Shown in pieces: positions 2,448-48,387 of a stretch of DNA of 64,000 nt (positions are counted from its first letter, which is position 1; each line of letters starts with the position of its first letter). Made by a program: the position numbers and the translations under genes. The stretch is taken from the NCBI GenBank assembly GCA_965644295.1, contig CBFFRP010000218.1, positions 124,001 through 188,000 on the forward strand. Direction: 5' to 3'. The notes below the pieces were generated by a model. The model was given only the letters and a program-made list of their open reading frames with translations, had not been told where the DNA came from and ran no database searches. The DNA is from Paraphysomonas bandaiensis. Lineage: Eukaryota > Protista > Chrysophyceae.

Positions 2448-2477
2448 AAAATATTTCTCTCAATATAGTATATATAC

Positions 2478-2918: not shown

Positions 2919-2966
2919 ATTATATTTTATTATACTATAAAAAATATTTATCTATTTATAGTATAT

Positions 2967-3641: not shown

Positions 3642-3724
3642 ACTTCGCTTCCGTAGTTTCCCTATTACATACGTACGACGTATATTATTCTCTTTCCACC
3701 AAGTCTATACTTTATAGTTCAACT
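3629..3724 (+). mobile_element. Short LTR-like segment followed by PBS-like TGGTAGCGG (3725-3733)
   Basis: 13/14-bp terminal inverted repeat AGTTGAAGTATAAA / TTTATAGTTCAACT; TGG starts immediately after; gag-like ORF downstream. Confidence 0.55.
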
Positions 3725-3777
3725 TGGTAGCGGATTCTCGCGATCTATAACCTTTGTTTGCCCTTTTACTCATTAGC

Positions 3778-4374
3778 ATGGCACTCCCTGTCTCCAAAAA
3801 CCCTATCCAGGAGTTAACACTGGATCAATGCAAACGATTATCATCCCACCTCGATAATCTGTCTCTTATACTTCCCTCTTGGGATGTTCCGCAGTATCCA
3901 GCACGTCTGCAAGACTTTGAAGCCTTCGAAACAGACTTTCGAGCAATGCTGAAGTCGACAAAACTATTGGACATCATCACCGAGAAGTCCATACGTGTTG
4001 CGACACCTCCTATTGATGCTGATGATGATGTCAAAGCGCTTGCGGAATGGCGTCAATCACTGTATGACGAAAAAAATATGATCGTATACTCTGCATTATG
4101 GCGCGCATTCCAGACCAATCGCTATATCACCATGTCCAATAGGCCGCCCAGACTACTCCCGAGACCCCGTCCGAAACGCAGTCAGTCAAGACAACGTCCG
4201 AGAGTCCTTCGACTACTAGGGGTCCAACGAAGACCCCCACAGCGTCCCCGACTCCAGACACACGTGCACACCTCACAGGTCCTACCCGACAGAGCACTGG
4301 ACTGCCCAGACCTCCACAACGCCGACGGCTTCGACAACTCTATCTACACCCGCGGCCCCACAGGAGCACAGTAA
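3778..4374 (+). pseudogene. Copia-like gag N-terminal fragment
   Basis: LPSWD...DFEAFETDFRAMLKSTKLLDII...EW...YDEKNMIVYSAL resembles Ty1/Copia gag; degenerates after about 4140; no pol. Confidence 0.5.
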
Positions 4375-4859
4375 CACAGACTACAAACCCAACTCCTCCT
4401 CCCAACAATCCCCACCACTCTCAACCCACACATCTGGAACTAGGTGCACTCAGGACCCTAATCCAGAACGCTGAGCCCCCTCCAACACCAATGGAGACCC
4501 ATCCCAAAGGGAGACCCCCAGATCAATAGCGCCGGTGAGTCCACGGACACACGATAAAGGCGAATTCCATATCACACAAAAGAACGGAAGTGGTTGCACC
4601 TTGGTGCTTGCGGCGACGCACAAGCAGCTTTCGTAGCGTTAAATAGTAGGATAAAAGAGTTTGTATTGATTAGTTACGGGTAGTGGTCTAACTAGTATGA
4701 CTAGCATTCTTCTAGCCACTAATTGATGCAAGGTCTCAACGCCTATTGCTAAATAATCAGACATTCACTACTATTCACTACTATAGCCAAGAAGGGCGTC
4801 AAACATGCGGATTTTTCTTGACAAGAGGAACTCGAGAGAATTTCGGGAAATGAAAGACT

Positions 4860-5721
4860 CCACTGGGGCGATTTATTGTCCTTTATAAGAAAGTATCTCC
4901 TTACTCCAGCGAACTTTTGAAAGCTGAAACAATATTTGACGCAAATTGAAAAATTACAGAGTGTTACGCTCGCCTTACAAAGAGATGGAACCAATTTGTA
5001 CCAAGCCCGCCAGTTATTTGATATACTGCAACAGGGATCTCAAGCGCTGCATCCATACCTTTCCCTGAATGCAAGCATTGTTGCCAGTGCAATTTTTGTG
5101 AAGGCAGTGTGGCTAAAATTCAAGGGAACGATGAAAGAGAGTTGACAGGAAATGAGGGAAGAACAGTTTGACATCTGCAACTAGATTCATCCATTGATGC
5201 TGGTGCACCTAACAGAAATAACGAGGATGAGAGTGAAGGAATGGATTTTGAGCAGCGTGTTCTGGACAGAGCCGAGTTCACCAAGAGAGCTCGACTTGGT
5301 ACCTATGAGTCCAACTACCGCTGCGTGTTTCATATTGAAGCACAATCTAATATTGTTGAGAGGCTCTTTATTGTCGTGCAAAGTTGATTATGACACCTGA
5401 GCGTAGAAACATGAATCTATATCGTCTAGAATCGTTGCTACTCCTACGAGCCAATTACATGTTGTGGGATGCTTACCTTCATGAATCCCTGCAAGAAGAT
5501 CCTGATGTGCCAGAAGAGGGCGAGAAGTAGTTTCAGTTACAATTCGTAGTCTGCTATTTAACTAAATATTAGTTATTTAATTAAAAATTAGTAATTATGG
5601 GAGCACTATACTATCTATTATGAGCGGTATTATCTACTTTATGTTAGTAGATATTAATGGCCATTATAATTGCCGGGAATTGGACTACCATAAATGAGCC
5701 ATTAATGGTTACTAAGCCCTG
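4860..5721 (+). mobile_element. Decayed hAT-like transposon 3' end (frameshifted transposase C-terminus plus right TIR ...AAGCCCTG)
   Basis: LQSVTLALQRDGTNLYQARQLFD; SNIVERLF, KLIMTPERRNM, LESLLLLRANYMLWD across frameshifts. Confidence 0.7.
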
Positions 5722-8103
5722 CTCAAGGGTAGGTACGTAGAGTATATACCTGGGCTCGTCCTCTATGTACCCCATAATCTATCCGACATGGGATATTGTT
5801 GTTATTGATATGGTGCAGCCTGAATAATGATCCCTCTAGAGTGTTACAATGTTGTTTGAGCAATTGCACATGACGCGTTTTACCTCACGTGATTTTGCAC
5901 TCAATTTTAAGGTCTTGCCTTTGAAGTGCTCCTCGATCTCAGGCCATGCCCTTTCTTCGTCTCCTTCTGCATTATTTTTTGAATTATGTCGTCGGCTTAC
6001 TCGTTTTGACTGCTCTGGAAAGCAGTAAACATAGTAAGTTGTTGCCCTATATTGCAAATTTTCGTATTAGTTAAAGACTTCACATGAAGTGTAAAGCCTA
6101 AACGGATACAACTAGTATCTTACGTGGACCAATCACATGATGATGATAACTCAGTCGATGGACATTTAATTATATATAGTTGTTTTCACGTGTATGATAC
6201 ATGTTAAGGGGTATTCTACGAGAAGATATTCTAATTATTACTATTATTACTGAATTTCTAGGACTTTTAGCCTTTTCGTACAACACTAATACCTTATAAA
6301 AACCTGAAAATCACTTAAAATGTGTAAAAACTACAACTACTACACTTATATTACTTAATAGAAATGTTTAGACGACTGTGTCTCTTTATGTAAATGAAAC
6401 GTGATGTTTTGATCCTTTAGGCATGGTGAAGTACTTATACCAGAATCTTCATCAACCCGTGTTGAGTTTTGCTACGTAAGAGGAATTAAAAACTGTAGTT
6501 CGAATGTATTTGATTTATGACCGTTACATGAAGAATACAGCAGTGTTTAACAGATTTAAATGAGCACATAAACACATGAACTATTGAGATGATAGAAATA
6601 ATTGTAGTGAAAGTGAAATAAGTTGACTGTCTATATAAGATCGTACGAAAATAATTGGTAGTTAAGATAACATGAATTTGGCGAATGACAATGAGCGCTA
6701 TGTGAAATTGATCATAATTTATATTTTACGCATTTAGTGTGAATTACGCTTAGTTATTAACGCCTTTGCCATCCTATTATGTGAAATCTTGATAACCTGA
6801 ACTTACTATTAACACCTACTTCACAAATATTTATTGTATTATAGCTAGTTAAAATATCATATGATCATCATATCTTCTAAAGTTAATGAGTACTTTTTAA
6901 GTTTTTAAAATTATATTTAATTGACATCCATTTCCACCCAAACTTCTTGTTCCTCTTTGTAATCATGTTTCCCTACATCTACCCTGTCGTCGCATTAATA
7001 CCACATCCGTTTCATCGACATCCTTGCAGACAAATGAGCTACTTCCGAGAAAACAAACTTCCCATGATACAAAACTTCTTGTGCCCGTGTGCCCCCTACA
7101 CTTTTCTCTGGTTCCGAAGACTTGCTCTGTGAGATATTCCATCGTTCGCGCAACAAACTGCTTCGCACCTTTCCATAATTATTCGGTGGGTTTCTGCTCA
7201 GGATGATATGGAGGAGTCACGAATGCACGACACTAACATAGCCCTGGACTCTATAAAAGTGTTCAACTCGGAACAGTCTCTGTAGGTTATCACATCGAAC
7301 TGCTCCTTGATGCGGATGTAATCTCTTGAGACCATAAACGAGGTTGTCTGAGTGAGGATTGACCTCTTCGCATGACTTATCGAGGCTGGCGGTCTATCTC
7401 GCTTCCTGGTTTGACTAAAGGGCTAGTGAGGTATATCACATGAGTATCGCTGTGTTGATAGAGGGTCATGGGCCACACCTAGAAGAGTACTCTATATGCA
7501 TATATCCACATCCATATCCATGCCATAGACGCAGCTACAGCGTTCAGTACTGTATATCTGATGCGGTTATGTGACTGTGTGTCCGTGTGAAGAGTATGGT
7601 ATACTGTATATACGGGTATACACGACTGCAATGAATTGCTGTAGACTGCTATGAAAATTCATGAAACCGTAATCAGGGCTATCAAACGTGCAAACGACGT
7701 GGAAGCTTTTGAAATTTCAATATCCGGCCCGTAGTATGCTGTATGCTGTAGTGTATGAGAAAGAACAGTCAGTGGTTCAGTGGAAATCGTCAGCACATGG
7801 AAATACACTTCCTGGTTCAATAGACATGTGTCGTAGAACTGTATTTCCTCATATATATTCCCCACCCACTACAACACATACACACTATACTGCTGTACTG
7901 TACGCTACACTGCATAGTGACACTGTGTGTCGGGAATATACTGACTGTCCTTCTCCTCTAGGATGACTTACTTATCAGTGTCGCCGTAGAGACGAGACAC
8001 ATAGCTATAATCTGAAGTCGTGTTTTATACCGTATGAGTGGGTGGTGTTGCCCGTGTCTGATCTATAGTCTATAGCTGATCGCCTATATATACATATAGA
8101 GAT

Positions 8104-27597: not shown

Positions 27598-29117
27598 TGA
27601 ATAACTCCCTATATGAAGTATAAAAATATATATTGCTGGAATGGCTAAATTTTTATATTCGTATTACCGTAATGATAAATGAATGAATGAATGAATGAAT
27701 AGCCACTGGCAAGCTATATACGATAATAATAATGTACTCTTCGCGATATATTTTGAAATGCTGTTTTAATCAATTATTGAAAGCATAGAATTTTATCAAT
27801 ATGAATTCTAGTACAGCTTTTAACAAGACAATATGTTCGTAGCACTACACATCGACACAGCATCAAGTATAATCAAATGTGTAACAATGATTAGTTGTAG
27901 ACACGATATAGATTTAGCGAACTCTAAAAAATGCGAGTAAGCTCCGCAAGAAATACCTTTAATGCGCAGTAATCAAGCAAAACTTCAGGGGGGGCTTAGC
28001 ATTGACATGATTGACCGCTCTTTGCTTTTATCTGGCCACCTGCGATCAAGTCAGTTTGGTTCTGACATATTAAGGGCAGTCTAATTCCAAGTGAAATAGA
28101 GCATTCCAAGCCGCTGCAATTGGGAAATATTATTCAACCTAATCATATTGGTTGAATTACCTACTGCAATTACGGGACGATTTGAAATTCTTTCAGTATG
28201 TTTAAATAGAACTACAGAAAGAAGGTGAACATCAGCTCGATCTTCACGACGTTCGTACATTGTTTGACGAACATCATATTCATAGCGCTGCTTTAGAAAA
28301 GACAATCGTGAAGATTCAATGTGGCAACGAAGTCTCACTTACAGACAGGAAAAAAGAATTACAGACATGATGACAGCGAGAGTCTAGTACAAAAGGACAA
28401 CACAGCGCAACGCTTGATTGATGGTAACAGGCAGTGGAAGCGAGCACATCTTATCAAGCAAACTCGATACTGCAGCATGAAGCTCTAGAATTCCACAAGC
28501 AATAAGGTTGACATATTATTCAGTAGAGCTATGATTGTTATGACTGATTCGCGCAAAAGTCTGACCCCTCGGCATTACAGTTGAGCAAGCTATGTTGGCA
28601 GCTAATGTATAATGTATACCTACTTGAGTATACGTGGTTTGTAGTTTGGCATCAATTAATGATAATTCAATTACGATGTTAACTATAATTATTTAGTAGA
28701 CGTGCAAACTACCTGCTGAGAAGAAAAAACAAGAAAAGTGACGGAAGATAATCGACTAGATTATATTATGACACCAAACAAGAAACCAAGTTATGAACTA
28801 TGAACTACAGGTCATAAGTGTGAATATAAAATGACTCTTCAGGTCATATATGTGACACTATGTGAACCAACACCTGAATTAACAAGACTCAACCGTAGTA
28901 CTGTGAAATGTGTCTGTACTTAACGTATCTGCTGTATACTGTGTAATACTGTATAGTCCAGATGTCCAGATGAATACAGTTGAGTATACCACGCATGAAG
29001 GGTTTCATATCTCAATTTATTTATTATGTCTAGTATCAACAATAATATGAAACCTCCATATCAATTAACTTCTTGAGTGTTCCTCAGTGATATTATACCC
29101 CACCATATATAACGGTC

Positions 29118-32100
29118 TCATACTGGTGGGCTCCATGGGTCGTCATTGAATTCACCATTGTCCACGTTATCGTCACTTTCGTAAACAATATCCTTAACAA
29201 CTCGGTTCTGAGATCTAGCTTCACCAATGTTTTTAGACTCAGTCCGCCTGGCCGCTTCCTGTAATTCCTCCAGGTATCTTTGCTTCATATCAACCGCGGA
29301 GGTGTAGTTGGGGAGTTCCTCTCGATCTTCAACTCTTTCTTCTCCCTCGTCATCGTAGTCTAGACTTTCTTCTTCATGAACACGATTATGCTCTTCAGAT
29401 AGTTGCTTCTGTGAATTCGCAATAGTTTCAATGATTTCATCCACTGCACTTTCATCGACAGATTCCAAGCTACTAACACGTCGGTATCGTTCTTCCAATC
29501 GTCTGGTGCTGTGTCTGCGGCTACTTCTGTGATGACGAGATGATGAACTCTCGAGGCGATGAAGCGATGAAGATCGCCTTCGGAAACCATCGCTACTTCT
29601 GCTTCTCCTATATTCGTCGTGACTACTCCGTCGGTGCAGGTCTCGGCTGGAGCTTCTACGATGCCTATCTCGGTGACTACTACTCCTACTCCTCCTATAC
29701 TCGTCATGACTACTCCGCCGGTGCAGATCATGATGGGAGCTCCTGTGATGGCGGTGATGACCACTACTGCTTCTGTGGTAACTATCACGACTGCTTCGGC
29801 GATGTAAGTCACGACTGCTGCGGTGATGCCCATGCGCCCCACTGCTACTGCGCCGATGCAAGTCTCGACTACTGCTACGGTGACTAGAGCGTCTGTGGTG
29901 GCGATCGTCATCGTAGTGACTGCTGCTGCGTCTACGTAGCTCACGTGATGAGCTATGCCGACGACCATAGTCCCTATCCCGAGTACGCGAGGAGGATCGA
30001 CGAATATATCTGTCTGAATCAAAACTCAACTGGCCTTTATCTGAGTAATCATGCTTTTTCTCAGAGGAGGATAGTAACCCAGGAGACATTTCTCTAGGGT
30101 CGACAGACTCCGGAGCCTCAACATCCTTGTGGACTGTGTGACCCATGCCATGCTGTATTATATCTCCATTCTCAAGCATATTTAGTTTCTCAAGGGTCGC
30201 CGCATGGTCATCTTGTTGGATGGCGTTAAAGTCAGATGCTGTATCAAATTTAACACGGACAAAAAGCCCAGAATGTGGAAGTTTTTGAGCGGCGAAATTT
30301 TTTTCCTCTAGCTCTTCGAACAACGTGAGATTTCTGAATCCCTGGCGCAGACATGTCACGGGTATTGAAACAAATGCCTTGCATTCATCGTTCGAAAACA
30401 CCCTTAACGTTAATTGTCCTTGTGTCTTATCTTTCAAAGCAAATGAAAACACCTGAAACGACACGATACATTAGTAAGCGAAGGGCATCAACATATACAG
30501 CACACCTCGTTCCAAAAAGGATTCCTTCCGTGCTTCTTGATACACCGCGTCTTCTGCTGCACTTCATCACAAGGAGTTCCATTCAAATCAACGACTACAT
30601 AGAAGCCCTTATTCCTAGGCTTTCGGTGTCGGCAATGTGAATCAAACTGCAAAACAAAAGTAAGAATAGTACACACATCACTGAGTTGATCTCTACCTCA
30701 GATTCGCGAACACTATTCACTGGATGATGGCTGTCGTCGTCACTAAATCTCCCATCATCGTAATTCATTGACATTGACTTGCTTTGGAGCAAAGGGTTCG
30801 TCATCATCTTGCTTGGAGTGTCATGCATGTGGGAGGCAAGTGCTGTTAGCGAAGATGTAACTGGAAGCTCGTGTCCACTGATAATATGCAGGGTCAAGAC
30901 GTACGGCATTGAGGGCTGACACTCCCTCAGTGTGCGAAGTGCGATAGGCTTCAGGACATACCCACATCCACCGTTCATTCGAAACCGTCCGTGGTTTATC
31001 TTTGTTCCCAGCGATGGATACTGGTGGCACAGTGAAAGGAATGATATACCACTATCCCAGGCAGTAACCATACTTCCATATGAGCCAAACTTTTTGGTAT
31101 TAGAATCCATATAAATAAAACTGCACATAGAGTGAAAAAAATACGTAGAATGAAAAAAATCCTACCAAAACTTCTTCATATTAAATTTAACGAGTGATTC
31201 TTCAGCATCTGGATACTCAGCAATTCGAGCAAGCATATCTCTTAGACTATGACAGCCAACACGCATTCCATGCGAATAGTGAAGTAAACGCATTAAGTTG
31301 GGATGAATCCCACGCGCATTGTCACCAATCCCACTGTGCCTCCTATGTCCCGGTCGCAAGGTCGACTCAACATCAACAATACTATAGTTGCGAGGAACCG
31401 AGCTGTTTTGAGAATTTTCCTCCACTGTATTAAGCTTCGTATTGAGAGCAAAATCTCTTTCGGAGTCATACTCAGCCGCCTTTTCTTCCTTATCCCCGTT
31501 ATAGGGGGCTACCCTGTCGACCATTCTGTTTCCGTTGAGAACGAACGATTCATAAGGAGATGGTGCAGCAGCAGTTTCTGAATTGTCCACTCTATACGCG
31601 GTATGAATATCTTTTTTCCGGTGGGTTAGAAACATAATGACCCTATTACTCAGCTCGGCAGGGGAGGGAAGAAGTTGGTTCTGTACCTCAGAGGGCGTAA
31701 ATATAGCATCACCGAATACTTTTTTAAGTAGTCTGGCGGCACGTTTCTGTTGAGCAATGCCACACGACACTTCAATCATTAGAATAAGAGGGAACTTACT
31801 ATACACAAAGGCAACCCGTTGAATGAATAGTAGAGTTTCTGATAAAAAACATAAAATATATTACCCATAAGATATCCTACTTTACCTTTAAAAAGTGCTC
31901 TCTCTTTTCCACGACTAGACCCGACATATAATTCAGTCTGTTCCCCATCAGGATGGATGCGGTCTTCGAAAATTCGCAACTCAAGCGCCCGACATCCTTG
32001 CTCGATTGCTGTTGAATAGCAGTTCGGTCTATAGTCCTCCTCCAGTAAAGAATTTTCACTTATCTGTCGATAAGGAGTGTCCCCGGTTAGTCCTTCAGAT

Positions 32101-35100
32101 GTCGATATATAGTAGTGTTGGAGTGGATGCGACATGTCCTCATTTGATAGCAAAGATTGCATAGGATCGAACCCATCGTTTTTCTGGCTTGTCATGATAT
32201 TCACGAAACCATTGTAAGATAAGACCGGGAAATCTTCACAATGCATTTCCCCCATCCCCTCCGAAATCATCTTGTGTGCTTCCTCAACCGTTAGTTTTCT
32301 GCCCTGCGAAACTTCCCAGAAGTGCTGAAATGTTGGTACACCAATAACCTCATGTAAAACGGACGTGTCAAACTCGTCATCCACTTCTAAAGGAAATATA
32401 TCACTGGTAAAGTCATGTCCAGCGCGGATTTTATTCCATACAATCTCCAGATCCGGTCTAGAATTAACACATTAAATCTAACATTTTCAGATGACAGGTA
32501 CTAACCGTCGTCGCAGCTGGTATACTAAACTATCGAATTGTGAGAATGTAATTTCATCATGTGTTGAATTGCCAATAGTACTTCGCAATAGCGCCGAGGT
32601 AAAGCTTGCACGATCAAACTGAATACCTAAGTTGGACACGAGCTCTATAACCTCTCTACGAGATAAAAAGCCGCGATGTTTGGTATCCAAAAAATTCCAC
32701 TTTTTTCGTAGCAATTGGCGGTCCAGTCCAGCTTCTTGAATGTCAGCATTAATAAGTTGCAATATAAAGCGCAATCCAGTGAACCAATCTTCAAATGAAT
32801 CATCGTCGGTTGCGCATAAATCAAGTGAACGGAAGCCATAAACCAATGAAAACGATCGAGACGGTGGCATAGGTCCGTGAGATACACCCTTGTAAGCATC
32901 AAAAGGTGGGGTCGACTGTCCAGCTACCAGTCTCCACACCAAACGCAAATCCACTAAAATAAACATAAACGACTACATACCAATGGGCTGCTCACATACC
33001 TTGGCAGTCACTGCTGGGTTTCAGTATGTTTTTCGGTTTCCACTGTAGATAATGAAAGTCAGGGGTAATCACTATCACAGTTTTCCGCACACTTCCATTT
33101 CTTCCAAATTTATAGAAAGGGGTAGCTAAATGCAAGACACATAACAATTTATAATGCGATAAAATAAGTACTTACGCTTCAGCAAGTAGGAAATATCATC
33201 TTCAATAGCTTTCAGAGTGCTTGAAACATACATTTCATACTCTTTACTTCTCGACTGGACCTTTTGTAAGGTATATGGGCTGGCATACTCTCCTCCATAG
33301 ACACTCTCACGACTGAACTCGTCAACTGTTGACTGTCGCTTCGAGAGCACTTTCCGGTAAGGACCCATGTTCCGTTCCGGCTCTCTTTCCTCATAATCCT
33401 GATCATGAGAACCAGGAGATTCCACTGTTTCTAGTTTCCTCTTGAGGCGAGAGTTCTCCGCCTCTAAAGCTTGTATGGTTGCTTGTAACTCCGTAATTTT
33501 TGTGTGGTGGATACGATTCACTGGTGCAGCAAGAGGGTTAAATGACGCTCGTCTAGTTTCCGACCCCAACGAGTGTTGAGAAACAATTGTAGTACATCCC
33601 TTAACAGTTATATCCTCCTGAGGTATGGAGGTGACATTGTTATCTGACTTTTCAATATTAGACTGGTGGACATGGAGTGTATCCGCAGTGAGCGTTTTCG
33701 GTTTCTCTGATGCAGTTATCGACCCGGTGATTTGAATTGGATCAAGGGAGACGCCATCATCATGATCACATCCTCCAACATTTTCTTCGCTATCTTCACG
33801 TAAAGAATCTATATCAATATCAATATTACCCTCGTCCATACGATTACTGTTAGTTGTTCCGAAAGAGCCACATGAATCACGGGAGCTTTCTGGTCTCGTA
33901 GCGATTGCACATCGGTTTCTTACGCTCCTTCCTCTCCACAACGCTTGAAGCTTGGCGACTCGAGAAAAGATAAACTCGTCGCGAGCGTTTTGGGACTCAC
34001 GGATTCGTTCTAGTCGTACCAGGAAGCCACGCATAAGAGACTGTATACGAGTAGCAGCACCTCTTCTCTTCCTCAAATTTATCACTCGCAATTTGGCAAT
34101 AAAGCAACGGACCAAACACTGCAATCGAATCGCAGCCGCTCGTATCGCACCATCACGTAGCCTCCGGTAGAAGTGCAAAATTCGACAACCGATCAATTTC
34201 ACAGCCAGCTGTTGAGCTGCATTTAAATAAAAGTAGGCTACAGCCGTCATCATAACACAGTTGTTCCCAACATAAATGCCGGAAATAATATCGTCCATCG
34301 AATACCCAACACTTTCCTGAACACCCTTCACATTGGCACATTGTGCCTTTAGTTCTGGAAGATACGGAAGAAGCTGCACTAAGCTAGTAGCCACTTCGTT
34401 CCATTCCTTTAAGGATGGGTTGTCCAGTCCATGCGATCGGTAGTCCCATAATGCAGTCAAAAATTGAGATGTCAACTGGTTGGACTTCTTGGCAAGCACA
34501 GCAATAGGGCTATAGCGGTTAACCCAGGACACAGAATCAGCACGGTAAGGGTAAGTCTTCTTGTAAAATGTCAGGATACTATCCAATCCAAAGGGACGTA
34601 TTTGTCGCAAAACTATTTTTTGGTCAAACAAAATTGGATTTTGGGAGTCGTTCGGCTTTATGCATAGCATGAACGACGTGTCCGATGTCTTAGCTTCTGC
34701 TAGAATCTCTGCCATTTGAAGAGAGAAAAGCGACGTCAACGTACACACTTTCACCCCGCCTCTGTTCATAACGGATGAGGAGCGAGCACCCATACCCGGA
34801 CGACTGGGCAGAGGACTTGGGCTGTCTTGTAACAGAGAGGGATGTGCAGACCGGGACCGTAAGAATGAGTCGCGCCGATTTTGAGTCGGGGGAGTGCTGC
34901 TAGCAGCCATTTCAAAGGAGTGGCCACGCAGGCTCGGTGATCGCTCTTGCATCACATTCCGCAGACTAGGAGATCGGGAGTGTCCTCCAAGAAGATTACG
35001 GGAACTGGGCGTTCTGCCAGCCCCAAATGAAGCCCTCGATGGAGACAAATCGAGGGAGGGAGGGGGGGTGAGACCTGATGAGTGAGTCTGGTTAGACAAT

Positions 35101-37130
35101 GTCCGGACGTCGCAAAACATCGCCAGCTCCTCCTGTACAAACGATAGAGTAGAAGATCGAAGACACTCTAAAATCTCCATTGCAGGCTCGACTTTATTAC
35201 TATTCGTAAATCCATTGATATCATATCGAACGGATGATACGTAGTGTTGAATCAGGAACTCATACTTCTTCTGCTCATTGCGACCAGCAATAAACATTTT
35301 GTTATTCGAGTGTTGCGTGTATAGGATGCTTGCTAGTTTCTCATCAGAGGTGGATGATTTTAACTTCAATTGGTCATCGCAGATTGTAAAAATGCCATTT
35401 GATTTGTTGTCGAGGAGACGGATTGTCAGAGCATTATCAAAAAAATTAACTATCCCCACATTAACACTCTCCGAGTAGAAAAACTCCTTATCAAGAACGA
35501 ATACCATTTGGTTGAGGAACTGAAATAGACGTTCATTTGAGTAGTTCACACACAACTGCTCCAGGGAATTCCTGTCAAAACACTCAAACCCAGTAAAGTC
35601 ATATATATTAAATTGGTTTTGAGCTATAGGGGTCGCTGGACTACAGTCGAATACATTTCCCTGGTCAGATAATGTGGTATCTGACTTTGTGGGAGTTCCC
35701 TCCGCATTTGCGGCACAGAACAATTCCGCGATTCCAGCATTCACTTTGCTCACGACCCAGCGAAATAAAGAGATGTATAGTTGACTTGCGAATGCATCCC
35801 GTGCCACAAGAGACTCAGCTAAATCCAAATTTTTCTCCACGATGTTTCCAGCAAAGTTGAGACTCCTTTTGGCGACTACGGCTAGGAGGGATTCGAGTGT
35901 TATACCCAGCAACTTGAAGACTCTATTCATATGATCCACACTGGCTGGGTCAGAAGAAAACACTGTAGATACATCCCCATAATTATCTACTTCCTCCAAT
36001 TCAATTTGCCCAAGATGCAAAATCCCTGCAAGTACAGCAAATATAGACGAGTTTTGCTTCGCCTTATTTATTTTTGCAATAGAATCCAAGGCAGCGGCAA
36101 GATCCTTGTAGCTGGACTTCCCCGGACGGAACACCGTTTTCGGTCGAGTCATGGCATATCGGAAGGTAGTAAGGTTGTCAATACCGTACTTGCTCATTGC
36201 TTGAGCCGCGAAATATATGTCGTCAAAAACGTCAAAAAATACATTGTAGTTGGACTCGCCAGGGCGCTGGATGGTGGTCCGATCCATTTCCAGGTGAAAA
36301 CAGCGGAATATGACACCCTTTATGGCTCCTGTTTTTTCACTGAAAGTTATCTTTATCGCTTTGGAGAACCTCGATGATGTGATATTACTCACAGTCTGTG
36401 CGTGACCAAAAGACTCTAGAATAGTGTGCACATGATCAAAGAACTTTATATCTGGAGTAAACGAAGTGTCAGTATCTAGTCGTCGTTGAAGCTTAGCTGC
36501 AATTAATGCAATGTGACTACATAGCTCTCGGGTGCAACGGGACTTGCCCCCGCCTGATTCCCCCAACATGATGACTGCTTGATTCCCAGAGCTTCTGAAA
36601 CTTACATTGGAGGGATGGAGTTTGAGGTACTTTTCATATGCCATTTTTATAATATCTGCTCGGATGGGATTAACGATATCTTGTCGCGCTTTGTCAACTA
36701 AAAAGTAATTTTTGTACATCTTTTCGTTAACAACGCTTGGGATGACCTCGTGACGATTTATAGACAAGAGTACAGGACCCACAGACAAATATCTCACATT
36801 TTCAGCAAAACAATGACGTAAACACTCCACTATCTCAGGTTCATTAATAATCGGTAATGCTGGTAAATCAATATCAGTAATTCTATTAAAATGAGAGTTA
36901 CTCCTTGGTTTAATATGTTGAAACTCATGAATCTCATCATCCTCATATTTAGTCTTAATAATTTCTCTTTCACCATCTAGTACATCAACATGAACTTCAA
37001 CTTTCCCCCCTAATTCTCCTATATGACCAATATCTTTAACAATTGATTTCTTCCATATAGAATCAATTTCATCTGTATAACTCCATACATCAGCACCTTC
37101 ATATATACTACATTTACTTTCATCAACCAT
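29118..37130 (-). CDS. Myosin motor-IQ-coiled coil-PH-EF-PI-PLC(X/Y)-like-C2 fusion protein with RS/H-rich tail (multi-exon)
   Basis: Myosin GESGGGKS, NITSSRFSK, DFTGFE, SLEQLCVNYSNERL, 3 IQ motifs; introns 33126-33175, 32954-32999, 32458-32505, 31839-31885 join in frame to PH, EF, DMSHPLQHYYIS, GCRALEL, NGGCGYVLKP, NPFWNE, LRQGFR. Confidence 0.8.
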
Positions 37131-38303
37131 TTAATACATAAAATAGAAATAAAAATAGATTGAAATTATATGAAACTGTTCAAGAGAGTGTTTCTTATGA
37201 TAGTAATGAGCTTGAGTTGGTTAATGTGGAGTGTGGTATCGTCGTAGTATGTATGTGTATATGGAACTCATCTTGTAATTTTTAACGCATATTTTCATAT
37301 AAAATTTTAATTATTCGCTAAAAAAACACACATATAAAAATAAACAGAAATGTACCTGTATACGTATAGACAACCAGTAGCAGTACACTATGTGTACAAT
37401 GTCATACTATAGCCGTACTGTAGGTACATACTTATATGTACGTACATACAGAGTATCATAGTACAGGTAGAGTGGTACTGCTCTATATATACTGTATATG
37501 CTACGACGTACTACTGTTGAAGTATGTGTAAAAAACGGCTACTCTTTTAGCGAAGTTTGAGGGTATTATTGAAAATACGGTACTATATACAGAGCATACC
37601 TTAACCGCTCAATCAGAGAGTGGTGCCGCACATGCACGTGCATAGTGCCATAAGATATAAGATCCATGATGGTTGGGAAGATGTGAATTCTGAATTCCTT
37701 GATTGCTAAGCTCGTAATCGGATGAAACATGCGTAACTAGACTAACACTACTTAGCTGTAGCTCATGATGGAATGTATGTGGAATACTGTTGCATTGTGA
37801 TGCAGAGATAGTACTGTTGTGGTACCAACGTGCTCAACATCACTGCCATTATCTTATACCCTCCAGAATCGAAGATACACGTCCCAAATGAAGAATAGAG
37901 TTTGTAAGTGTTGGTGATTGAAATATCACGCTGACACGATTAAAGCGTACTCTCTCCCTGTCATGCCGCTTTTGCAATTCACAGCTCTCACACTAATATT
38001 TGCTGAATGCTGAATTCCACATACAGAGGAGCTCAAAGGCAAGTACCGATCTCGCTTTTATATACAATAACTCCTGGATATGCGCTACTTGTTAAGGTAG
38101 TGTTACTGCAGTTATGGGGTCATATTTTCTATATACATTTTGCAATAAATCCTATTTTTAGATATAGACTTATTTTTCTCGATCCATGAGTTTCTTTGAG
38201 CCTATGTTGATAAAAAACGACTAGATTTTGGATTAGAAAGTCTTACGATCTAGGTAGCTGGTTTAGTAGTTGTGAAGAACAAAATCGTGAATAGAAATCT
38301 AAT

Positions 38304-42856: not shown

Positions 42857-45800
42857 TGTAGGACTATCCACTTACATATAGAATATATACGTGTACATGT
42901 CCTGTATTATATGATTAGTAGTACAGTACTGTATTGTATACGTGTACCATGTAGTTAGGAATACAAACTGTAGGGAATGTGATTGTTGTTGGGATTAGCA
43001 ATAGCCGTTGATATTGTAGACAGTATTATTAGCCGTTGATATTGTAGACAGTATTATTCATGATTCATTATACGATAATAATCATTATTTTGTACTTCTG
43101 TACTTGGGTATTGCTTTGCACACATACACATATGTATGCAAGCCCACAGTAATATTACTTAATAAGTAGTACTCAATCTCTGTGATATAACAATATTATG
43201 GGGGAAAGTAAGAGAAGCAAAATAAAAGCAGCTCCTCAAATAGAGGAATTGTTAGCTGCTTCGGGTTCTTCGTCTAAAAAGACGAAAAGAGAGAGAGAAT
43301 CCTCTCGAAAACGAGCAAGAGATGCAACAACATCATCTCAAATGCAATCTTCTCCTCAAACTGAGACATCAGTAGAGGCTGAAGGAGAATTGAGTGGAGT
43401 ATCATTTCGTGAGCTCTCTTCTTCTCAACCAAAGAGAAAGAAGCAAAGGAGTGGAGATCCGCACCCCAACAGGAGTGAGCGCATTGACTTGAATGAAGTC
43501 ATTGCGACGGAATCCACTCCACATGAAGTAATCAATACCGACTCTATTCCCTACTTAGGTAGTGTGCAAGATGAGGATATCATCGAATTTTGTGAAAATC
43601 TCTCGAAAAGAGATCCTAAAGGGACAAAATTCATAAGGTCAGAAATCATGGCACCAACAGTGCGTGATATGCTTCAGTTTCAGCGACAGCAGGATTTTGG
43701 AGATGAGTCTGACGAGGACTGGCTAGATCCAAACATTGTAACTACTGAGGAATTGATTCAGTGGTTAAAGCAAGCCTTTCTAGAGGAAGAGGAGCGATAC
43801 TCTGATACATTGGAGCCTCTTCCTAGGTTCATAGATAATATCATTGGACCAAAGGTTAAGGTGGATATTCATGTTCCTAAAGTATTCTTAAAAGAATATG
43901 GACGTCTGAATGAGCTTTATAAGCTCATTCCGGAGGCAAGTCTCACAGAGGTAGCCTCGGATACCATAGTCAAAACCCTCAAGAAAAACATTAAACTTGT
44001 GGGCGGACATTCCTTCAGAAAGGATGCCAAAGAGAAATTTATAGCGGATATAGGCCAAGGTCAATCTGCACCAAAAGATTTCGGAGCATTCTGTAGAAAG
44101 GTGCGAGAGCTTAACAATGACTATAGTCAAGCTGTGAGAAAAGTAAAGAGGATGGAAACTAAATTGGATTCCAAAGAAACATCTAAGTCTAACAAGACTA
44201 AGAATACAAAAACTTCATCCTCCAGCTCATCCTCAAGTACTAAAGCAACAACTGATACTAAGGAAGCATGTTGGATATGCGGTAATCTTCATAAAGGTGA
44301 CTGCACCCGCAAAACCTGTGCATGGGCTAACCATGAAAAGAAGCCATGGAAAGATTCCACACAGGGCAAAAAATATGCGGTTATGGGTTGGAGTACCTGC
44401 CCTTATGTGGAGAATCCTGATGGTCCTCCAAGATCGAAAACAAGTAAGTTATCATGCCCTAAGTGTTTATATATAAATGCTATTGACATGAATAATGATA
44501 TGCTCGATGTCTTTGTATATCCTAAAGCTGATGTCAATGTACAACAGGTAAAGGAAAATCTAAGAGCTAAAGCCTTATTGGACACGGGGGCTACTGGGAA
44601 TAATTTCATTAACCAAGAACTTGCTGATATGTTAGTTGCTAGGTATAGAATTCCATTGCACGAGTGTAACATTAAAATTTGTAGTGCGCTTGATAATGCT
44701 TGTTGTAGTAGCAAGCAATATATGATAATAACTATAAGATTAACTGATGAGTATAACAATACTCTTGATATTGAGTTGCAATGTTTGATAATAGATAGCA
44801 CCTTTGATATCATAATTGGTAGAGAAACTATCAAGAAATATAGATTAGTTGATCATTTTCCATCTCACTTTATGGAAAGAGAGTTAGCAGGGAAAATGCT
44901 AGCTACGGCCGCGGGCCATGCTGAGAAGACTCAGCTTCTCTCGGAACATATTAGTGAGAGAGCCACATGTTATAATAACATGGAAACATTAAGGCGCCAA
45001 GCTAAGGAACACCTTAGTTATAATAATAATTTACTTACAAGTAATAGCTTGGTTAGTACTATGTATTCACCTCCAATATCATCCATGCGTATAAGTGCAT
45101 ATGAAAAGGAAGATATAGGCGAGATTAGAGATAACTATCTGGAGTCAATCCCAGAAGAAATAGTTACAAATACTCAGGAAAAAGTAGAAGGTACTACGTT
45201 ACCAACTAAAATCTCTGGTCCCGAATCTTTACAAAGGAGGGTGAGAGAAATCCATGAAATCTATAAGGATAGATTTAGAACCACAGTGTCGGATATGCCA
45301 ATGGATGTTCCACCTTTTGAATTAGAGGTAGATAGGGATGCTTGGGAACAACCAAAACATTGTGGTCCGCCACGAAAGATGGATCGAGTACGACAGTATG
45401 CTTGTAAAAAGCAAATCGATACATTTGTGGAGCATGGAATAATACAACCAAGTACGGCTCCTTATTATAGCCAGGTATTATTAGTTCCCAAACCAAATGA
45501 TAAATGGCGATTCTGTGTAGACTATAAAGGTCTAAACAAGCACACACAGAGGGAACGTTGGCCAATACCTAACATCAAAGAAATGTTAGAACGTATTGGG
45601 TCTAAGAAACCCAAATACTTCATAATTCTGGATTTAGTATCTGGTTATTACCAGGCTAAAATTTCAGAGTACTCGAGAAAGTGGACGGCATTTATAACCT
45701 TCTGGGGAGTATTCGAATGGCTCCGACTACCCATGGGTTTGAGTGGTGCTCCATCATACTTTCAACGAGTATTAACAACAATTGTGCTTGCCGGGTTGAT

Positions 45801-48387
45801 TATGTTCATATGTGAATTATATCTAGATGACCTGATTATATATGCTTCTACAGAAGATGAACTAATTGAAAATTACGTTAAAGTTCTAGAACGCTTCAGG
45901 AAATACAATGTTTACATTAATCCTGAGAAAGTGAAAATAGGAGAGTCCGAAGTACAATATGTAGGACATACTCTAAATGAGGAAGGGTTACACTTTACTA
46001 GAGAACGTCTGGATAGTGTATTAAATTTCCCAAAGCCTGAAACTATGAAGGGTCTAAAATCTTTCCTCGGATTGGCAAATTATTTTCGGGATCACGTGCA
46101 CAACCACTCCTTAGTGGTGAGACCGTTAAATAAAATGCTTCTCAACTATCATAGACGTAAACGTCTACAATGGACAGAGGATGCCAATGAAGCATTTGAA
46201 AAGATCAAATTGATGATCCATGAATGTCCAACATTATTTTTCATTGATGACGAGTCACCAATATATTTATTGACCGATGCATCTGATTATGGAATAGGAG
46301 CATACCTCTACCAAGTAGTAGATGGTGTAGAACGTCCAATCGGATTTCTCAGTAAAACATTCGATGAAAGAATGATGAATTGGGATACACCTCAGAAAGA
46401 AGGATATGCTATATACTATGCCTTAGATAAATGGGACTACCTATTAAGGTATAGATACTTTACGATCAAAACAGATCATAAAAATATTACTCAGTTGAGA
46501 ACTGATTACGCTAAGGATAAGAAAGTTCAGCGATGGTTGAAATGTTTCCAAGCATATGATTATGATCTATGTGATATTAAAGGATCTGATAATGTTGTTG
46601 CTGATGCATTTAGTAGACTATGTGCATTAGAATCTAAAATGGAAACAAAATGTGCTTCCCTAATTCCCGATATTAAAGTTCCAAACAAGGAATGGGAAAT
46701 TATTAAAAGATTTCATAACAATGTTACAGGTCATCATGGTATTGATCGTACAATACAAAAATTACGAGACAATGGTCATAAATGGTCAAAGCAAGGGGCA
46801 CATGTGACAAAATTTATTAAAACTTGTCCTTGTTGTCAAAAGATGAGTAGAATTAAACCAATAATTAATGCTCATCCCTTTACTGTCTCAACATATGGCC
46901 CGATGCAAAGAATAGCAGTGGATTTTATTCAGAGTCTGCATCCAGATGAGGATGGATACACTAATATATTAGTGATTATCGATTCTTTTTCTAGGTGGGT
47001 AGAATTAATCCCTACTAAGAATCTCACTGCCATGGCGGCGGCAAAGGGATTGCTTCAACACCTGGGTAGATATGGAGCACCTATTGAGATTCATTCGGAT
47101 CTTGGACCAGCATTTGTGGATGATTTAACAAAATCATTGATAGAAATGGTTGGAAGTAATCAATCATTTTCGATGGCGTATTCTAAAGAAGAAAATGCTA
47201 TAGTGGAACGTGCTAATAAAGAAATTTTAAGGCACTTAAGAAATATTATATTTGATAAAAATGTACTAAATAATTGGTCAATGTATCTACCTTTAGTACA
47301 AAGAATTATGAATTCTTCTAAACATAGAAGCACCGGCGTTACTCCCGCTAGTATTCTATTTGGGAATGCAGTAGATTTAGATAAGAGTTTATTCATTGAA
47401 CACAATGAGAACTTGGACGGGAACGAACAAAAGCTATCACATTGGATAGATAGAATACAAAAGGTTCAGTCCACTATTATGGATGTTGCAAGACGAAATC
47501 TTCGCAAACATGATGAAATCCACATGGCAACTGCACCAAATATACAAACAAAAGAATTTCCAATAAATTCTTATGTGTTAGTTGAGCATAGACAAAATGC
47601 TTTACGTCCTGGACCGGCAAGTAAGTTATTACCATATCTTAAAGGTCCAATGCGAGTAGTCAATGTTATTGGAGACAAATATACTCTTCAAGATATTGTT
47701 ACTAAACGTAATAAAGACTATCATATAAAGAAATTAAGGGAATTTAATTACGATCCCTCTACTATTGACCCCTTACAAGTGGCATGTAAAGATGGTGGAA
47801 ACTTTTATGCTATTGACCATATTTCAAAAATAAAAGGTCGAGCTAAAGGTCCGAAAAGACAAATAAAATTTCTAGTACATTGGATAGGGTATGAAAAACC
47901 TACATGGGAACCATGGGCTAACGTTAGAAAAACGTATGCTCTACAAAATTTCCTAACTCAACATCCTGATGAAAATGTAAGAAATTTACTACCTCGAAAT
48001 GTGGTTTATTCTTCTGATGAAGAAGATTAATAACAAAGTTTACAGAATTGAGTGTCAATATAACACATTAACACATCAATTATAAGGGGAGGTAGTGTAG
48101 GACTATCCACTTACATATAGAATATATACGTGTACATGTCCTGTATTATATGATTAGTAGTACAGTACTGTATTGTATACGTGTACCATGTAGTTAGGAA
48201 TACAAACTGTAGGGAATGTGATTGTTGTTGGGATTAGCAATAGCCGTTGATATTGTAGACAGTATTATTAGCCGTTGATATTGTAGACAGTATTATTCAT
48301 GATTCATTATACGATAATAATCATTATTTTGTACTTCTGTACTTGGGTATTGCTTTGCACACATACACATATGTATGCAAGCCCACA
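42857..48387 (+). mobile_element. Full-length Ty3/Gypsy chromodomain LTR retrotransposon
   Basis: 292-bp LTRs TG...CA (42857-43148, 48096-48387) appearing identical; 4-bp TSD TGGA; PPT AAGGGGAGGTAG at 48084-48095. Confidence 0.96.
43198..48030 (+). CDS. Gag-Pol polyprotein (Zn knuckle, protease, RT, RNase H, integrase, chromodomain)
   Basis: CWICGNLHKGDC; LLDTGA; LPMGL, YLDD; TDASDYGIGA; H..GHHG..C.CC; GPMRV; FLVHWIGYEKPTWEP. Confidence 0.96.
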   Translation: MGESKRSKIKAAPQIEELLAASGSSSKKTKRERESSRKRARDATTSSQMQSSPQTETSVEAEGELSGVSFRELSSSQPKRKKQRSGDPHPNRSERIDLNEVIATESTPHEVINTDSIPYLGSVQDEDIIEFCENLSKRDPKGTKFIRSEIMAPTVRDMLQFQRQQDFGDESDEDWLDPNIVTTEELIQWLKQAFLEEEERYSDTLEPLPRFIDNIIGPKVKVDIHVPKVFLKEYGRLNELYKLIPEASLTEVASDTIVKTLKKNIKLVGGHSFRKDAKEKFIADIGQGQSAPKDFGAFCRKVRELNNDYSQAVRKVKRMETKLDSKETSKSNKTKNTKTSSSSSSSSTKATTDTKEACWICGNLHKGDCTRKTCAWANHEKKPWKDSTQGKKYAVMGWSTCPYVENPDGPPRSKTSKLSCPKCLYINAIDMNNDMLDVFVYPKADVNVQQVKENLRAKALLDTGATGNNFINQELADMLVARYRIPLHECNIKICSALDNACCSSKQYMIITIRLTDEYNNTLDIELQCLIIDSTFDIIIGRETIKKYRLVDHFPSHFMERELAGKMLATAAGHAEKTQLLSEHISERATCYNNMETLRRQAKEHLSYNNNLLTSNSLVSTMYSPPISSMRISAYEKEDIGEIRDNYLESIPEEIVTNTQEKVEGTTLPTKISGPESLQRRVREIHEIYKDRFRTTVSDMPMDVPPFELEVDRDAWEQPKHCGPPRKMDRVRQYACKKQIDTFVEHGIIQPSTAPYYSQVLLVPKPNDKWRFCVDYKGLNKHTQRERWPIPNIKEMLERIGSKKPKYFIILDLVSGYYQAKISEYSRKWTAFITFWGVFEWLRLPMGLSGAPSYFQRVLTTIVLAGLIMFICELYLDDLIIYASTEDELIENYVKVLERFRKYNVYINPEKVKIGESEVQYVGHTLNEEGLHFTRERLDSVLNFPKPETMKGLKSFLGLANYFRDHVHNHSLVVRPLNKMLLNYHRRKRLQWTEDANEAFEKIKLMIHECPTLFFIDDESPIYLLTDASDYGIGAYLYQVVDGVERPIGFLSKTFDERMMNWDTPQKEGYAIYYALDKWDYLLRYRYFTIKTDHKNITQLRTDYAKDKKVQRWLKCFQAYDYDLCDIKGSDNVVADAFSRLCALESKMETKCASLIPDIKVPNKEWEIIKRFHNNVTGHHGIDRTIQKLRDNGHKWSKQGAHVTKFIKTCPCCQKMSRIKPIINAHPFTVSTYGPMQRIAVDFIQSLHPDEDGYTNILVIIDSFSRWVELIPTKNLTAMAAAKGLLQHLGRYGAPIEIHSDLGPAFVDDLTKSLIEMVGSNQSFSMAYSKEENAIVERANKEILRHLRNIIFDKNVLNNWSMYLPLVQRIMNSSKHRSTGVTPASILFGNAVDLDKSLFIEHNENLDGNEQKLSHWIDRIQKVQSTIMDVARRNLRKHDEIHMATAPNIQTKEFPINSYVLVEHRQNALRPGPASKLLPYLKGPMRVVNVIGDKYTLQDIVTKRNKDYHIKKLREFNYDPSTIDPLQVACKDGGNFYAIDHISKIKGRAKGPKRQIKFLVHWIGYEKPTWEPWANVRKTYALQNFLTQHPDENVRNLLPRNVVYSSDEED

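What the first reader, a model, noticed from the sequence alone, without database searches (positions are those of the whole stretch)
29118..37130. Myosin motor fused in frame to a complete phospholipase-C-delta-type module
Seen: the 1334-aa myosin ORF has a donor (AAGC|GTAAGT, 33176) and an acceptor 50 bp on (TTTAG|CTACC, 33125). Splicing gives ISYLLK-PTPFYKFGRNGSVRKTVIVITPDFHYLQW, the start of a PH domain, so there is no intergenic gap and no separate start codon. Further short introns continue in frame through EF-hand-like, X, Y and C2 regions. Known: PH-EF-X-Y-C2 is the PLC-delta layout. I do not recall a myosin class with this tail. Inference: an actin motor that carries or is targeted by a phosphoinositide-binding PLC scaffold, possibly a new myosin class.
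Basis: partly seen in the sequence, partly recalled or inferred. Interest (0 to 1): 0.9.

Follow-up and report, generated by a model that had tools for sequence, protein, structure and literature searches.

The report
Myosin with dead phospholipase-C tail
One expressed gene of a marine, apparently non-photosynthetic stramenopile joins an actin motor (myosin) to a whole phospholipase-C-delta-shaped module that has lost its catalytic residues; I found this tail in no myosin survey or paper searched, though the scan had already met sister genes elsewhere in this genome.

Summary
The 1334-codon myosin ORF ends in a stop that lies inside a 50-nt GT..AG intron (33175-33126). A single 8126-nt transcript contig lacks exactly this intron and six more (45-53 nt). 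A DNA run of the same organism keeps all seven.

The CDS has 8 exons, 7674 nt and 2557 codons: motor, 3 IQ motifs, short coiled coil, PH, EF-hands, X, Y, C2, then a long Ser/Arg/His-rich tail.

Two environmental relatives carry the same junction inside one uninterrupted genomic ORF, so the fusion does not depend on my splice model.

The PLC module keeps the PLC-delta fold but has lost His311, Asn312, Asp343, His356 and Arg549. A stand-alone PLC in the same genome keeps them.

The genome holds at least three more such loci (contigs C84, C188, C255). Motor and tail trees allow a single origin.

Neither three myosin surveys nor my full-text searches mention a PLC tail.

The scan found this before on other DNA of this genome (s1-448322, s1-452768).

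The membrane-targeting function is inferred, not shown.

The parts
28740..37204 (-). Transcribed region. About 74 nt of 5' UTR, 7674 nt of CDS and about 378 nt of 3' UTR after splicing.
   Evidence: The X1 contig of 8126 nt lies on 29100-35000 at its positions 361-5922. The two ends are extrapolated from the contig's length; 74+7674+378 = 8126.
33176..37130 (-). Exon 1: ATG at 37130, motor, neck and coiled coil. It ends in phase 1.
34488..36869 (-). Myosin motor domain. P-loop GESGGGKS, switch I SSRFSK, switch II DFTGFE.
   Evidence: Pfam 3.3e-96. Three profile stretches. Alignment to myosin Va. Motifs.
34755..35096 (-). Ser/Pro/Arg-rich insert of about 114 aa at the loop-2 (actin-binding) position of the motor.
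   Evidence: Gap between the Pfam and PDB-aligned stretches. Composition. Also present in P0001-P0003.
33906..34124 (-). Three IQ (light-chain-binding) motifs, aa 1003-1075.
   Evidence: Pfam IQ 24.1 bits against a cut-off of 20.3. Motif scan.
33420..33497 (-). Short heptad-like helix (ITELQATIQALEAENSRLKRKLETVE), conserved in relatives. A possible coiled coil.
   Evidence: Read by eye; no coiled-coil predictor was run.
33126..33175 (-). Intron 1 (50 nt, GTAAGT..TTTAG). It holds the TAG that ends the 1334-aa ORF.
   Evidence: Skipped in the X1 and X4 contigs, kept in the DNA run X18.
33000..33125 (-). Exon 2: start of the PH domain.
32954..32999 (-). Intron 2 (46 nt).
32506..32953 (-). Exon 3: rest of the PH domain (to about 32754) and the first EF-hands.
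   Evidence: The relative's model matches the PLC-delta1 PH domain 1mai (TM 0.79 by the target).
32458..32505 (-). Intron 3 (48 nt).
31886..32457 (-). Exon 4: EF-hand-like region and first half of the X box (from about 32135). It holds YISTSEG in place of the catalytic SSHNTYL.
31839..31885 (-). Intron 4 (47 nt), inside the X box.
31166..31838 (-). Exon 5: second half of the X box (to about 31633), the X-Y linker and the start of the Y box.
31121..31165 (-). Intron 5 (45 nt).
30697..31120 (-). Exon 6: Y box (to about 30946) and start of C2.
30647..30696 (-). Intron 6 (50 nt).
30506..30646 (-). Exon 7: C2 domain.
30453..30505 (-). Intron 7 (53 nt, GTGTGC..TTCAG).
29118..30452 (-). Exon 8: end of C2 (to about 30228), then a Ser/Arg/His-rich low-complexity tail, an LPNY motif, the conserved C-terminal DPWSPPV and the TGA stop (29120-29118).

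Best explanation
This is one protein-coding gene of 8 exons and 2557 codons for an unconventional myosin heavy chain. In order it has a motor that looks ATPase-competent and carries a long basic Ser/Pro/Arg-rich loop-2 insert, three IQ motifs, a short coiled-coil-like helix, and a complete PLC-delta-like module (PH, EF-hands, X/Y barrel, C2). The module has lost its catalytic residues. A long disordered Ser/Arg/His-rich tail follows and ends in a conserved DPW(S/T)PPV.

Shown: the gene structure, its expression as one spliced mRNA, the conserved architecture, the fold, and the loss of catalytic residues.

Inferred: the pseudo-PLC no longer cleaves lipid. It acts as a membrane-binding and signal-sensing tail (PH for PI(4,5)P2 or IP3, C2 and EF-hands for Ca2+ and lipid). 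It would place or regulate the motor at phosphoinositide-rich membranes, as the TH1 or PH tails of class I and class X myosins do.

My odds: fusion real 0.97; pseudo-enzyme 0.9; lipid- or IP3-directed targeting as the main role about 0.55.
For: Splicing.
- one 8126-nt contig of run X1 crosses the myosin/PH junction with all 7 introns removed at the predicted bases.
- Run X4 bridges introns 1 and 2, and a polyA metatranscriptome (X5) bridges introns 5-7.
- The DNA run X18 shows none of these joints.

Relatives.
- P0001, P0002, P0003, P0011, P0012 and P0017 all combine Myosin_head with PI-PLC-X.
- P0001 (L001:3001-9138) and P0003 (L024:2361-9143) are single uninterrupted ORFs in genomic contigs across the same junction.

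Module and residues.
- domain order by Pfam.
- 2e-29 to PLC-gamma1 and 2e-19 to PLC-delta1.
- the model of the relative's tail (pTM 0.68) matches PLC-delta1 (TM 0.77-0.79 by the target) and its PH domain 1mai.
- His311 to Glu/Asp, Asn312 to Gly, Asp343 to Arg, His356 gone, Arg549 to Phe/Tyr across the clade. The genome's stand-alone PLC (contig C308) is canonical.

Selection.
-, against the paralog on C84: pN 0.04-0.25 with synonymous sites near saturation (pS 0.66-0.82).
- The PH/EF exon is the most conserved part (93% identical against 82% for the motor).

Motor.
- motor motifs are kept.
Against: - No lipid-binding, ATPase or localisation data exist.
- Switch I has Ser where most myosins have Gly (SSRFSK).
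- In the window itself the PH and EF-hand Pfam hits fall below the curated cut-offs. PH_12 passes only in the relatives P0012 and P0017.
- The structure was predicted for the relative P0003, 64% identical over the best aligned stretch (PH to first half of X), not for the window protein.
- Contigs cannot show rare isoforms, so an intron-1-retaining, tail-less form is not excluded.
Confidence: 0.8

Rival explanations
1. There are two neighbouring genes, a 1334-aa myosin that ends at the TAG at 33126 and a separate PLC-like gene. The apparent fusion is read-through or an assembly chimera.
For: The myosin ORF closes with a stop. Contigs across two genes need not be single transcripts (caveat printed).
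Against: - The stop lies in an intron that is removed precisely in two runs.
- Exon 2 has no start codon and continues in frame.
- P0001 and P0003 are uninterrupted genomic ORFs across the junction.
- Six environmental relatives share the architecture, and three further loci of this genome carry the same co-linear domain order; C188 is confirmed by one continuous 1795-aa product, P0165.
Confidence: 0.02
2. The tail is still an active PI-PLC, with other residues doing the chemistry. The motor would carry lipid hydrolysis along actin.
For: The whole X/Y barrel, Glu341, Glu390 and Tyr551 are kept, and the module is under purifying selection.
Against: Both general acid/base histidines, two Ca2+ ligands (Asn312, Asp343) and the phosphate-binding Arg549 are replaced in every member of the window clade. 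The C188 and C255 copies have also lost the His-Asn pair, Asp343 and His356, though C188 keeps Arg549. The stand-alone PLC of the same genome keeps them all.
Confidence: 0.05
3. The pseudo-PLC is mainly a regulatory or protein-binding scaffold, like the mammalian PLC-related inactive proteins. It would be an IP3/Ca2+ sensor or an autoinhibitory domain that folds back on the motor, rather than a membrane anchor.
For: - The EF-hands and the complete dead barrel are conserved, not only the PH domain.
- The conserved C-terminal motifs (LPxY, DPW(S/T)PPV) look like docking peptides.
Against: Nothing speaks directly against it. It overlaps the best explanation and differs only in emphasis. No partner is known.
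Confidence: 0.25
4. Regulated retention of intron 1 yields a second, tail-less myosin of 1334 aa, so the locus encodes two products.
For: Retaining the intron closes the frame 16 codons later. The paralog C84 keeps introns 1 and 2 in frame and free of stops.
Against: No unspliced RNA contig was seen in X1, X4 or X5. Contigs drop rare variants, however.
Confidence: 0.1

Closest known systems
PLC-delta-type phosphoinositide phospholipase C (rat PLC-delta1, PDB 1djx/1qas, PH domain 1mai)
   Same: Domain order PH, EF-hands, X, Y, C2. The predicted fold of the relative's tail matches (TM 0.77-0.79 by the target). Sequence match 2e-19.
   Different: The catalytic His311, Asn312, Asp343, His356 and Arg549 are replaced. 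The X box and the C2 domain carry inserts. The module sits at the C-terminus of a myosin and is followed by a disordered tail of about 370 residues.
PLC-related catalytically inactive proteins of mammals (PRIP / PLC-L1, PLC-L2). Recalled from my own knowledge, not tested here.
   Same: A PLC-delta-like layout that has lost catalysis and is thought to act as an IP3/PIP2-binding scaffold.
   Different: Probably an independent loss. The tail groups with protist PLCs (P0022-P0030) in my tree. PRIPs are not fused to a motor. No PRIP sequence was included here.
Myosins with lipid-binding tails: class I (TH1 with a PH-like core) and class X (PH domains); stramenopile classes with PX or FYVE tails (Odronitz and Kollmar 2007, PMC2375034)
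   Same: A motor plus IQ neck joined to a phosphoinositide-binding module. The likely logic is to tether actin-based force to a defined membrane.
   Different: Here the lipid-binding part is a whole pseudo-enzyme. The motor is only about 26% identical to the nearest myosins without a PLC tail that the search found and forms its own clade.
Sister genes in the same genome (contigs C84, C188, C255) and environmental proteins P0001-P0003, P0011, P0012, P0017, P0165
   Same: Same architecture and the same kind of dead active site. C84 is 83% identical in the motor.
   Different: C188 and C255 have more conventional motors (Pfam 579 and 390 bits against 323) and shorter tails. P0011's gene seems to add EF-hands in front of the motor.

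Membership tests
Myosin superfamily | Myosin_head domain above Pfam's curated cut-off | tested here: met
   323.5 bits against a cut-off of 33.3. 2e-57 to myosin Va and myosin II structures.
Myosin superfamily | Nucleotide-site motifs: P-loop GESGxGK(T/S), switch I SSRFGK, switch II DxxGFE | tested here: met
   GESGGGKS, SSRFSK (Gly to Ser, shared by the clade) and DFTGFE.
Myosin superfamily | IQ neck after the motor | tested here: met
   Pfam IQ 24.1 bits against a cut-off of 20.3. Three IQ-like motifs at aa 1003-1075.
Myosin superfamily | Actin-activated ATPase and motility | not testable with these tools
   Needs biochemistry.
One of the 79 named myosin classes (Kollmar and Muhlhausen 2017) | Motor domain groups inside a named class in a tree with the reference set | not tested
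   No reference sequences of the named classes were on hand. Among 32 motors (own genome and search hits) the window clade is 100* on a stem of 1.27. Within the files held as text, neither the main text nor the supplements mention a PLC tail, and chrysophytes are absent from the species list.
Eukaryotic PI-PLC (PLC-delta type) | Domain order PH, EF-hands, X, Y, C2 and the fold | tested here: met
Eukaryotic PI-PLC (PLC-delta type) | Catalytic and Ca2+-binding residues His311, Asn312, Glu341, Asp343, His356, Glu390 and Arg549 (rat delta1 numbering, from my own knowledge of the family) | tested here: not met
   Only Glu341 and Glu390 (and Tyr551) are kept. His311 to Glu, Asn312 to Gly, Asp343 to Arg, His356 absent, Arg549 to Phe. 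It is therefore a pseudo-PLC, not a PLC enzyme.
PRIP / PLC-L pseudo-enzymes | Orthology to the animal PLC-L genes | not tested
   No PRIP sequence was included. The tail groups with protist PLCs, so independent inactivation is the likelier reading.

The most novel reading that the evidence does not exclude
The PLC-tailed myosins are an undescribed myosin class. It arose once, by fusion of a motor to a stramenopile PLC-delta gene that then lost catalysis, and it diversified into at least two subfamilies in silica-scaled heterotrophic flagellates and their uncultured marine relatives. The pseudo-PLC would work as a PI(4,5)P2/IP3/Ca2+-sensing cargo adaptor, for example for phagocytosis or for traffic of scale-forming vesicles.
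Probability: 0.5. Interest if true: 0.65.

Novelty: new variant of a known kind. Interest (0 to 1): 0.55.

Why it matters
Myosin classes are told apart by their motors and tails, and the tail decides what the motor pulls. A whole pseudo-enzyme used as a tail is unusual. It gives a natural example of a dead PLC reused as a binding module, in parallel to the animal PRIP proteins. Between the two paralogs the PH/EF part is conserved more strongly than the motor itself.

The gene family sits in a poorly sampled branch of heterotrophic stramenopiles that the large myosin surveys did not cover. It therefore adds to the predicted pool of undescribed classes.

The claim is directly testable with lipid-binding, PLC and motility assays on recombinant fragments.

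It is not a one-off. Orphan myosins with new tails are common, and this scan had already reported sister loci in the same genome.

Tried and rejected
- **Joined protein.** I left out the step of joining the exons into one protein. CDS length and frame were checked by arithmetic on the coordinates.
- **C84 introns.** I first read the 1565-aa ORF of paralog C84 as lacking introns 1 and 2. The residues around the junction show that both introns are present but happen to be in frame and free of stops, so I dropped that argument.
- **PH domain alone.** A sequence search of the PH domain alone against solved structures found nothing meaningful. The PH fold shows only in the predicted model and in Pfam PH_12 hits of relatives.
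- **Tandem repeats.** Tandem Repeats Finder found no DNA repeat in the Ser/Arg/His-rich tail.
- **Long PLC hits.** Other long proteins among the PLC hits (P0068, P0078, P0156, P0134, P0138, P0075, P0027) are PLC-epsilon-like or other PLCs without a myosin.
- **Atlas.** The Atlas feature search returned only generic myosin clusters.
- **Diatom origin.** I found no light-harvesting protein and no PsbO in the genome, and the named myosin hits are not diatoms. A choanoflagellate origin is unlikely with only 3 SH2 matches.
- **Literature.** Searches for myosin together with PLC terms gave nothing relevant.
Full report
**1. The observation**

On the minus strand, ORF 37130-33126 (1334 codons) is a myosin: Pfam Myosin_head 3.3e-96 plus IQ. 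Its last 16 codons and its TAG lie in a stretch that starts GTAAGT at 33175 and ends TTTAG at 33126.

The open stretches downstream carry Pfam hits in this order: PH_12 (weak), EF-hand_7 (weak), PI-PLC-X in two pieces, PI-PLC-Y and C2.

**2. Gene model**

A search with the motor returned three long proteins that combine Myosin_head with PI-PLC-X and PI-PLC-Y: P0001, P0002 and P0003. Laying P0003 and P0001 on the window with tblastn and reading the splice sites gave 8 exons and 7 GT..AG introns.

| Intron | Window coordinates | Length (nt) |
|---|---|---|
| 1 | 33175-33126 | 50 |
| 2 | 32999-32954 | 46 |
| 3 | 32505-32458 | 48 |
| 4 | 31885-31839 | 47 |
| 5 | 31165-31121 | 45 |
| 6 | 30696-30647 | 50 |
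| 7 | 30505-30453 | 53 |

The exon lengths sum to 7674 nt, which is 2557 codons plus a TGA stop.

**3. RNA evidence**

This model was fixed before the reads were laid (note).

- In run X1, one 8126-nt contig covers 29100-35000 and skips exactly these seven intervals. Their ends read CT..AC on the plus strand, which is GT..AG on the gene's strand.
- Run X4 carries another organism label and a few base differences. Its contigs bridge introns 1, 2, 3, 4, 5, 6 and 7.
- A polyA marine metatranscriptome (X5) bridges introns 5-7.
- The DNA run X18 holds the whole stretch unspliced.

The contig's length equals 74 nt of 5' UTR, 7674 nt of CDS and 378 nt of 3' UTR. This fits one collinear mRNA from about 37204 to about 28740. 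The two ends are extrapolated, because I laid only 5901 bases.

**4. Evidence that does not depend on splicing**

- P0001 is one uninterrupted ORF in a genomic metagenome contig, L001:3001-9138. Genes lie on both strands of that contig.
- P0003 is one uninterrupted ORF, L024:2361-9143, running from mid-motor to the C-terminus.
- Both read ...SYLL-x-(P/G)(T/A)PFYKFGR... with the same spacing as the window's spliced product.
- Further fusions are P0011, P0012 and P0017.
- Among the 150 best hits of the PLC module in 1.84 billion representative proteins, the only long proteins with a myosin belong to this group. The other long proteins that I scanned are ordinary PLCs.

**5. A gene family in this genome**

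The genome (62.6 Mb, 669 contigs) has PI-PLC-X matches at six contigs.

- C308 and C331 carry a stand-alone PLC with canonical motifs.
- C84 carries a paralog of the window gene, 83% identical in the motor. It shares introns 1 and 2, which there happen to be in frame and free of stops.
- C188 and C255 each have a Myosin_head followed on the same strand by IQ, PI-PLC-X, PI-PLC-Y and, on C188, C2.
- The C188 gene is matched at 100% by a continuous 1795-aa protein on a 5881-nt JGI contig (P0165) with Myosin_head, IQ, PH_12, X and Y. Since the genomic copy has introns, that contig must derive from spliced RNA.

Trees:

- In a motor tree of 32 rows, the window clade (window, C84, P0001-P0003, P0011, P0012, P0017) has SH-aLRT 100 on a stem of 1.27.
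- The free tree does not unite all ten PLC-tailed motors. An AU test does not reject uniting them (p = 0.29).
- In a tree of PLC modules, the seven myosin-borne modules form one group (99). C188 sits on a long branch, so attraction is possible.

A single fusion followed by duplication is therefore allowed and mildly favoured, but not proven.

**6. The tail is a pseudo-PLC**

Sequence and fold of the relative P0003:

- Residues 1040-1990 of P0003 are 64% identical to the window over the best aligned stretch, from the PH domain to the first half of the X box.
- They match PLC-gamma1 at 2e-29 and PLC-delta1 at 2e-19.
- Their AlphaFold model (mean pLDDT 73.6, pTM 0.68) has low confidence only in the X-Y linker and in an insert in the C2 domain.
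- The model matches PLC structures at about 1e-34. It matches PLC-delta1 with TM 0.77-0.79 by the target, and the PLC-delta1 PH domain 1mai with TM 0.79.

Aligned motif blocks, with rat delta1 numbering taken from my own knowledge of the family:

| Residue (rat PLC-delta1) | Canonical motif | Window |
|---|---|---|
| His311, Asn312 | SSHNTYL | STSEGLT (His to Glu, Asn to Gly) |
| Glu341, Asp343 | ELDCW | LELRIF (Glu kept, Asp to Arg) |
| His356 | YHG | no counterpart |
| Glu390 | IENHC | IEVSC (Glu kept) |
| Arg549, Tyr551 | RIYP | FIYM (Arg to Phe, Tyr kept) |

All relatives in the window clade show the same kind of changes. C188 and C255 have also lost the His-Asn pair, Asp343 and His356, though C188 keeps Arg549. 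The stand-alone PLC on C308 keeps every motif.

**7. Selection**

Against the C84 paralog, synonymous sites are near saturation (pS 0.66-0.82) while pN is 0.04-0.25.

| Part compared | Amino-acid identity | pN |
|---|---|---|
| PH/EF exon 3 | 93% | 0.038 |
| Motor | 82% | 0.106 |
| X, Y and C2 exons | 75-80% | 0.11-0.14 |
| Neck and linker | 59% | 0.245 |
| Exon 8 (end of C2 plus distal tail) | 68% | 0.198 |

The dead module is thus under clear purifying selection. The PH/EF part is the most constrained part of the protein.

**8. Other features**

- The motor keeps its P-loop, switch I (with Ser for Gly) and switch II.
- It carries a Ser/Pro/Arg-rich insert of about 114 aa where loop 2 lies.
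- After three IQ motifs comes a short conserved heptad-like helix.
- The last exon holds a Ser/Arg/His-rich low-complexity region and ends in DPWSPPV. P0003 and the L001 relative keep this ending as DPW(S/T)PPV, and an LP(N/S)Y motif is shared with P0003.

**9. Mechanism**

These steps are inferred. The motor binds actin and light chains. The pseudo-PLC no longer cleaves PIP2. It retains the parts that in PLC-delta bind PI(4,5)P2 or IP3 (PH), Ca2+ (EF-hands) and Ca2+ with lipid (C2).

The simplest reading is a membrane-directed or signal-gated tail. It would couple actin-based force to phosphoinositide-rich membranes, or switch the motor with Ca2+ or IP3. A PRIP-like scaffold or autoinhibitory role is a close rival.

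**10. Organism**

The genome has about eight silicon-transporter loci, no light-harvesting protein, no PsbO and only three SH2 matches. The named myosin relatives are stramenopiles: oomycetes, Ectocarpus, Fibrocapsa and Phaeomonas. This fits a colourless, silica-using marine stramenopile.

Another agent of the scan names Paraphysomonas (s1-445062). I did not verify the name. The 'probably diatom' of s1-442369 does not fit the lack of photosynthesis genes.

**11. Known or new**

- The words PLC and phospholipase do not occur as a tail domain in Sebe-Pedros et al. 2014 (PMC3942036), in Kollmar and Muhlhausen 2017 (PMC5583752, including the held supplements) or in Odronitz and Kollmar 2007 (PMC2375034).
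- Chrysophytes are absent from the 2017 species list.
- Full-text searches found no paper on such a fusion. Figures are not held, so a cartoon could have been missed.
- No named NCBI or UniProt protein with the architecture appeared. The window's own records are hidden from me.
- The scan has already reported sister loci of this genome with the same conclusion (s1-448322, s1-452768; also the notes s1-456018 and s1-448429).

**12. Verdict**

I rate this a new variant of a known kind: a myosin with an undescribed pseudo-enzyme tail, and probably an undescribed class. Interest is moderate to good. It is lowered somewhat because orphan myosins with novel tails are numerous and because the family was already noted in this scan.

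Noticed in passing
window 32060-32061: All four runs, including the DNA run X18, read CC where the window has TT. On the gene's strand this changes Ile-Ser to Met-Gly in the insert of the X box. It is either an assembly error or an allele.
   Followed up: partly
G000 whole genome: Myosin_head matches fall on about 45 distinct places. There are about 8 silicon-transporter loci, no Chloroa_b-bind match, no PsbO match and only 3 SH2 matches. This points to a myosin-rich, silica-using, apparently non-photosynthetic stramenopile.
   Followed up: partly
L019 (G000:C36:137000-142049) against L018 (G000:C84:2000-11999): The end of contig C36 repeats the start of the C84 myosin-PLC gene, with the same upstream ORFs, but has a frameshift just after the P-loop. 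It could be an overlapping contig end, an allele or an assembly error.
   Followed up: no
L018:1850-6544 (contig C84): In the paralog, introns 1 and 2 are in frame and free of stops. A mechanical ORF list therefore shows one 1565-aa ORF running through them, which is a trap for anyone arguing that the introns are absent.
   Followed up: yes
window 29121-29141; L001:9215-10435; end of P0003: The C-terminal heptapeptide DPW(S/T)PPV is conserved in three relatives, although the tail before it is low-complexity and fast-evolving. An LP(N/S)Y motif is shared with P0003. These may be docking peptides.
   Followed up: no
L023:1718-3916: In the relative that encodes P0011, the ORF just upstream carries EF-hands and the first part of the motor. 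That member may therefore have an N-terminal EF-hand extension.
   Followed up: no
window 34755-35096: A Ser/Pro/Arg-rich insert of about 114 aa with repeated RSPS-like motifs sits at the loop-2 position of the motor and is conserved in relatives. From my own knowledge, it recalls the long loop-2 inserts of class IX myosins.
   Followed up: no
L002 (G000:C308:28252-31461) and C331: A stand-alone, canonical PLC-delta-like gene (PH, EF-hands, X, Y, C2 with all catalytic motifs) lies on two contigs that may be alleles. Its PH domain resembles that of the myosin tails.
   Followed up: partly
window 43198-48030 (+): A 1610-aa ORF lies downstream of the gene. I did not examine it.
   Followed up: no
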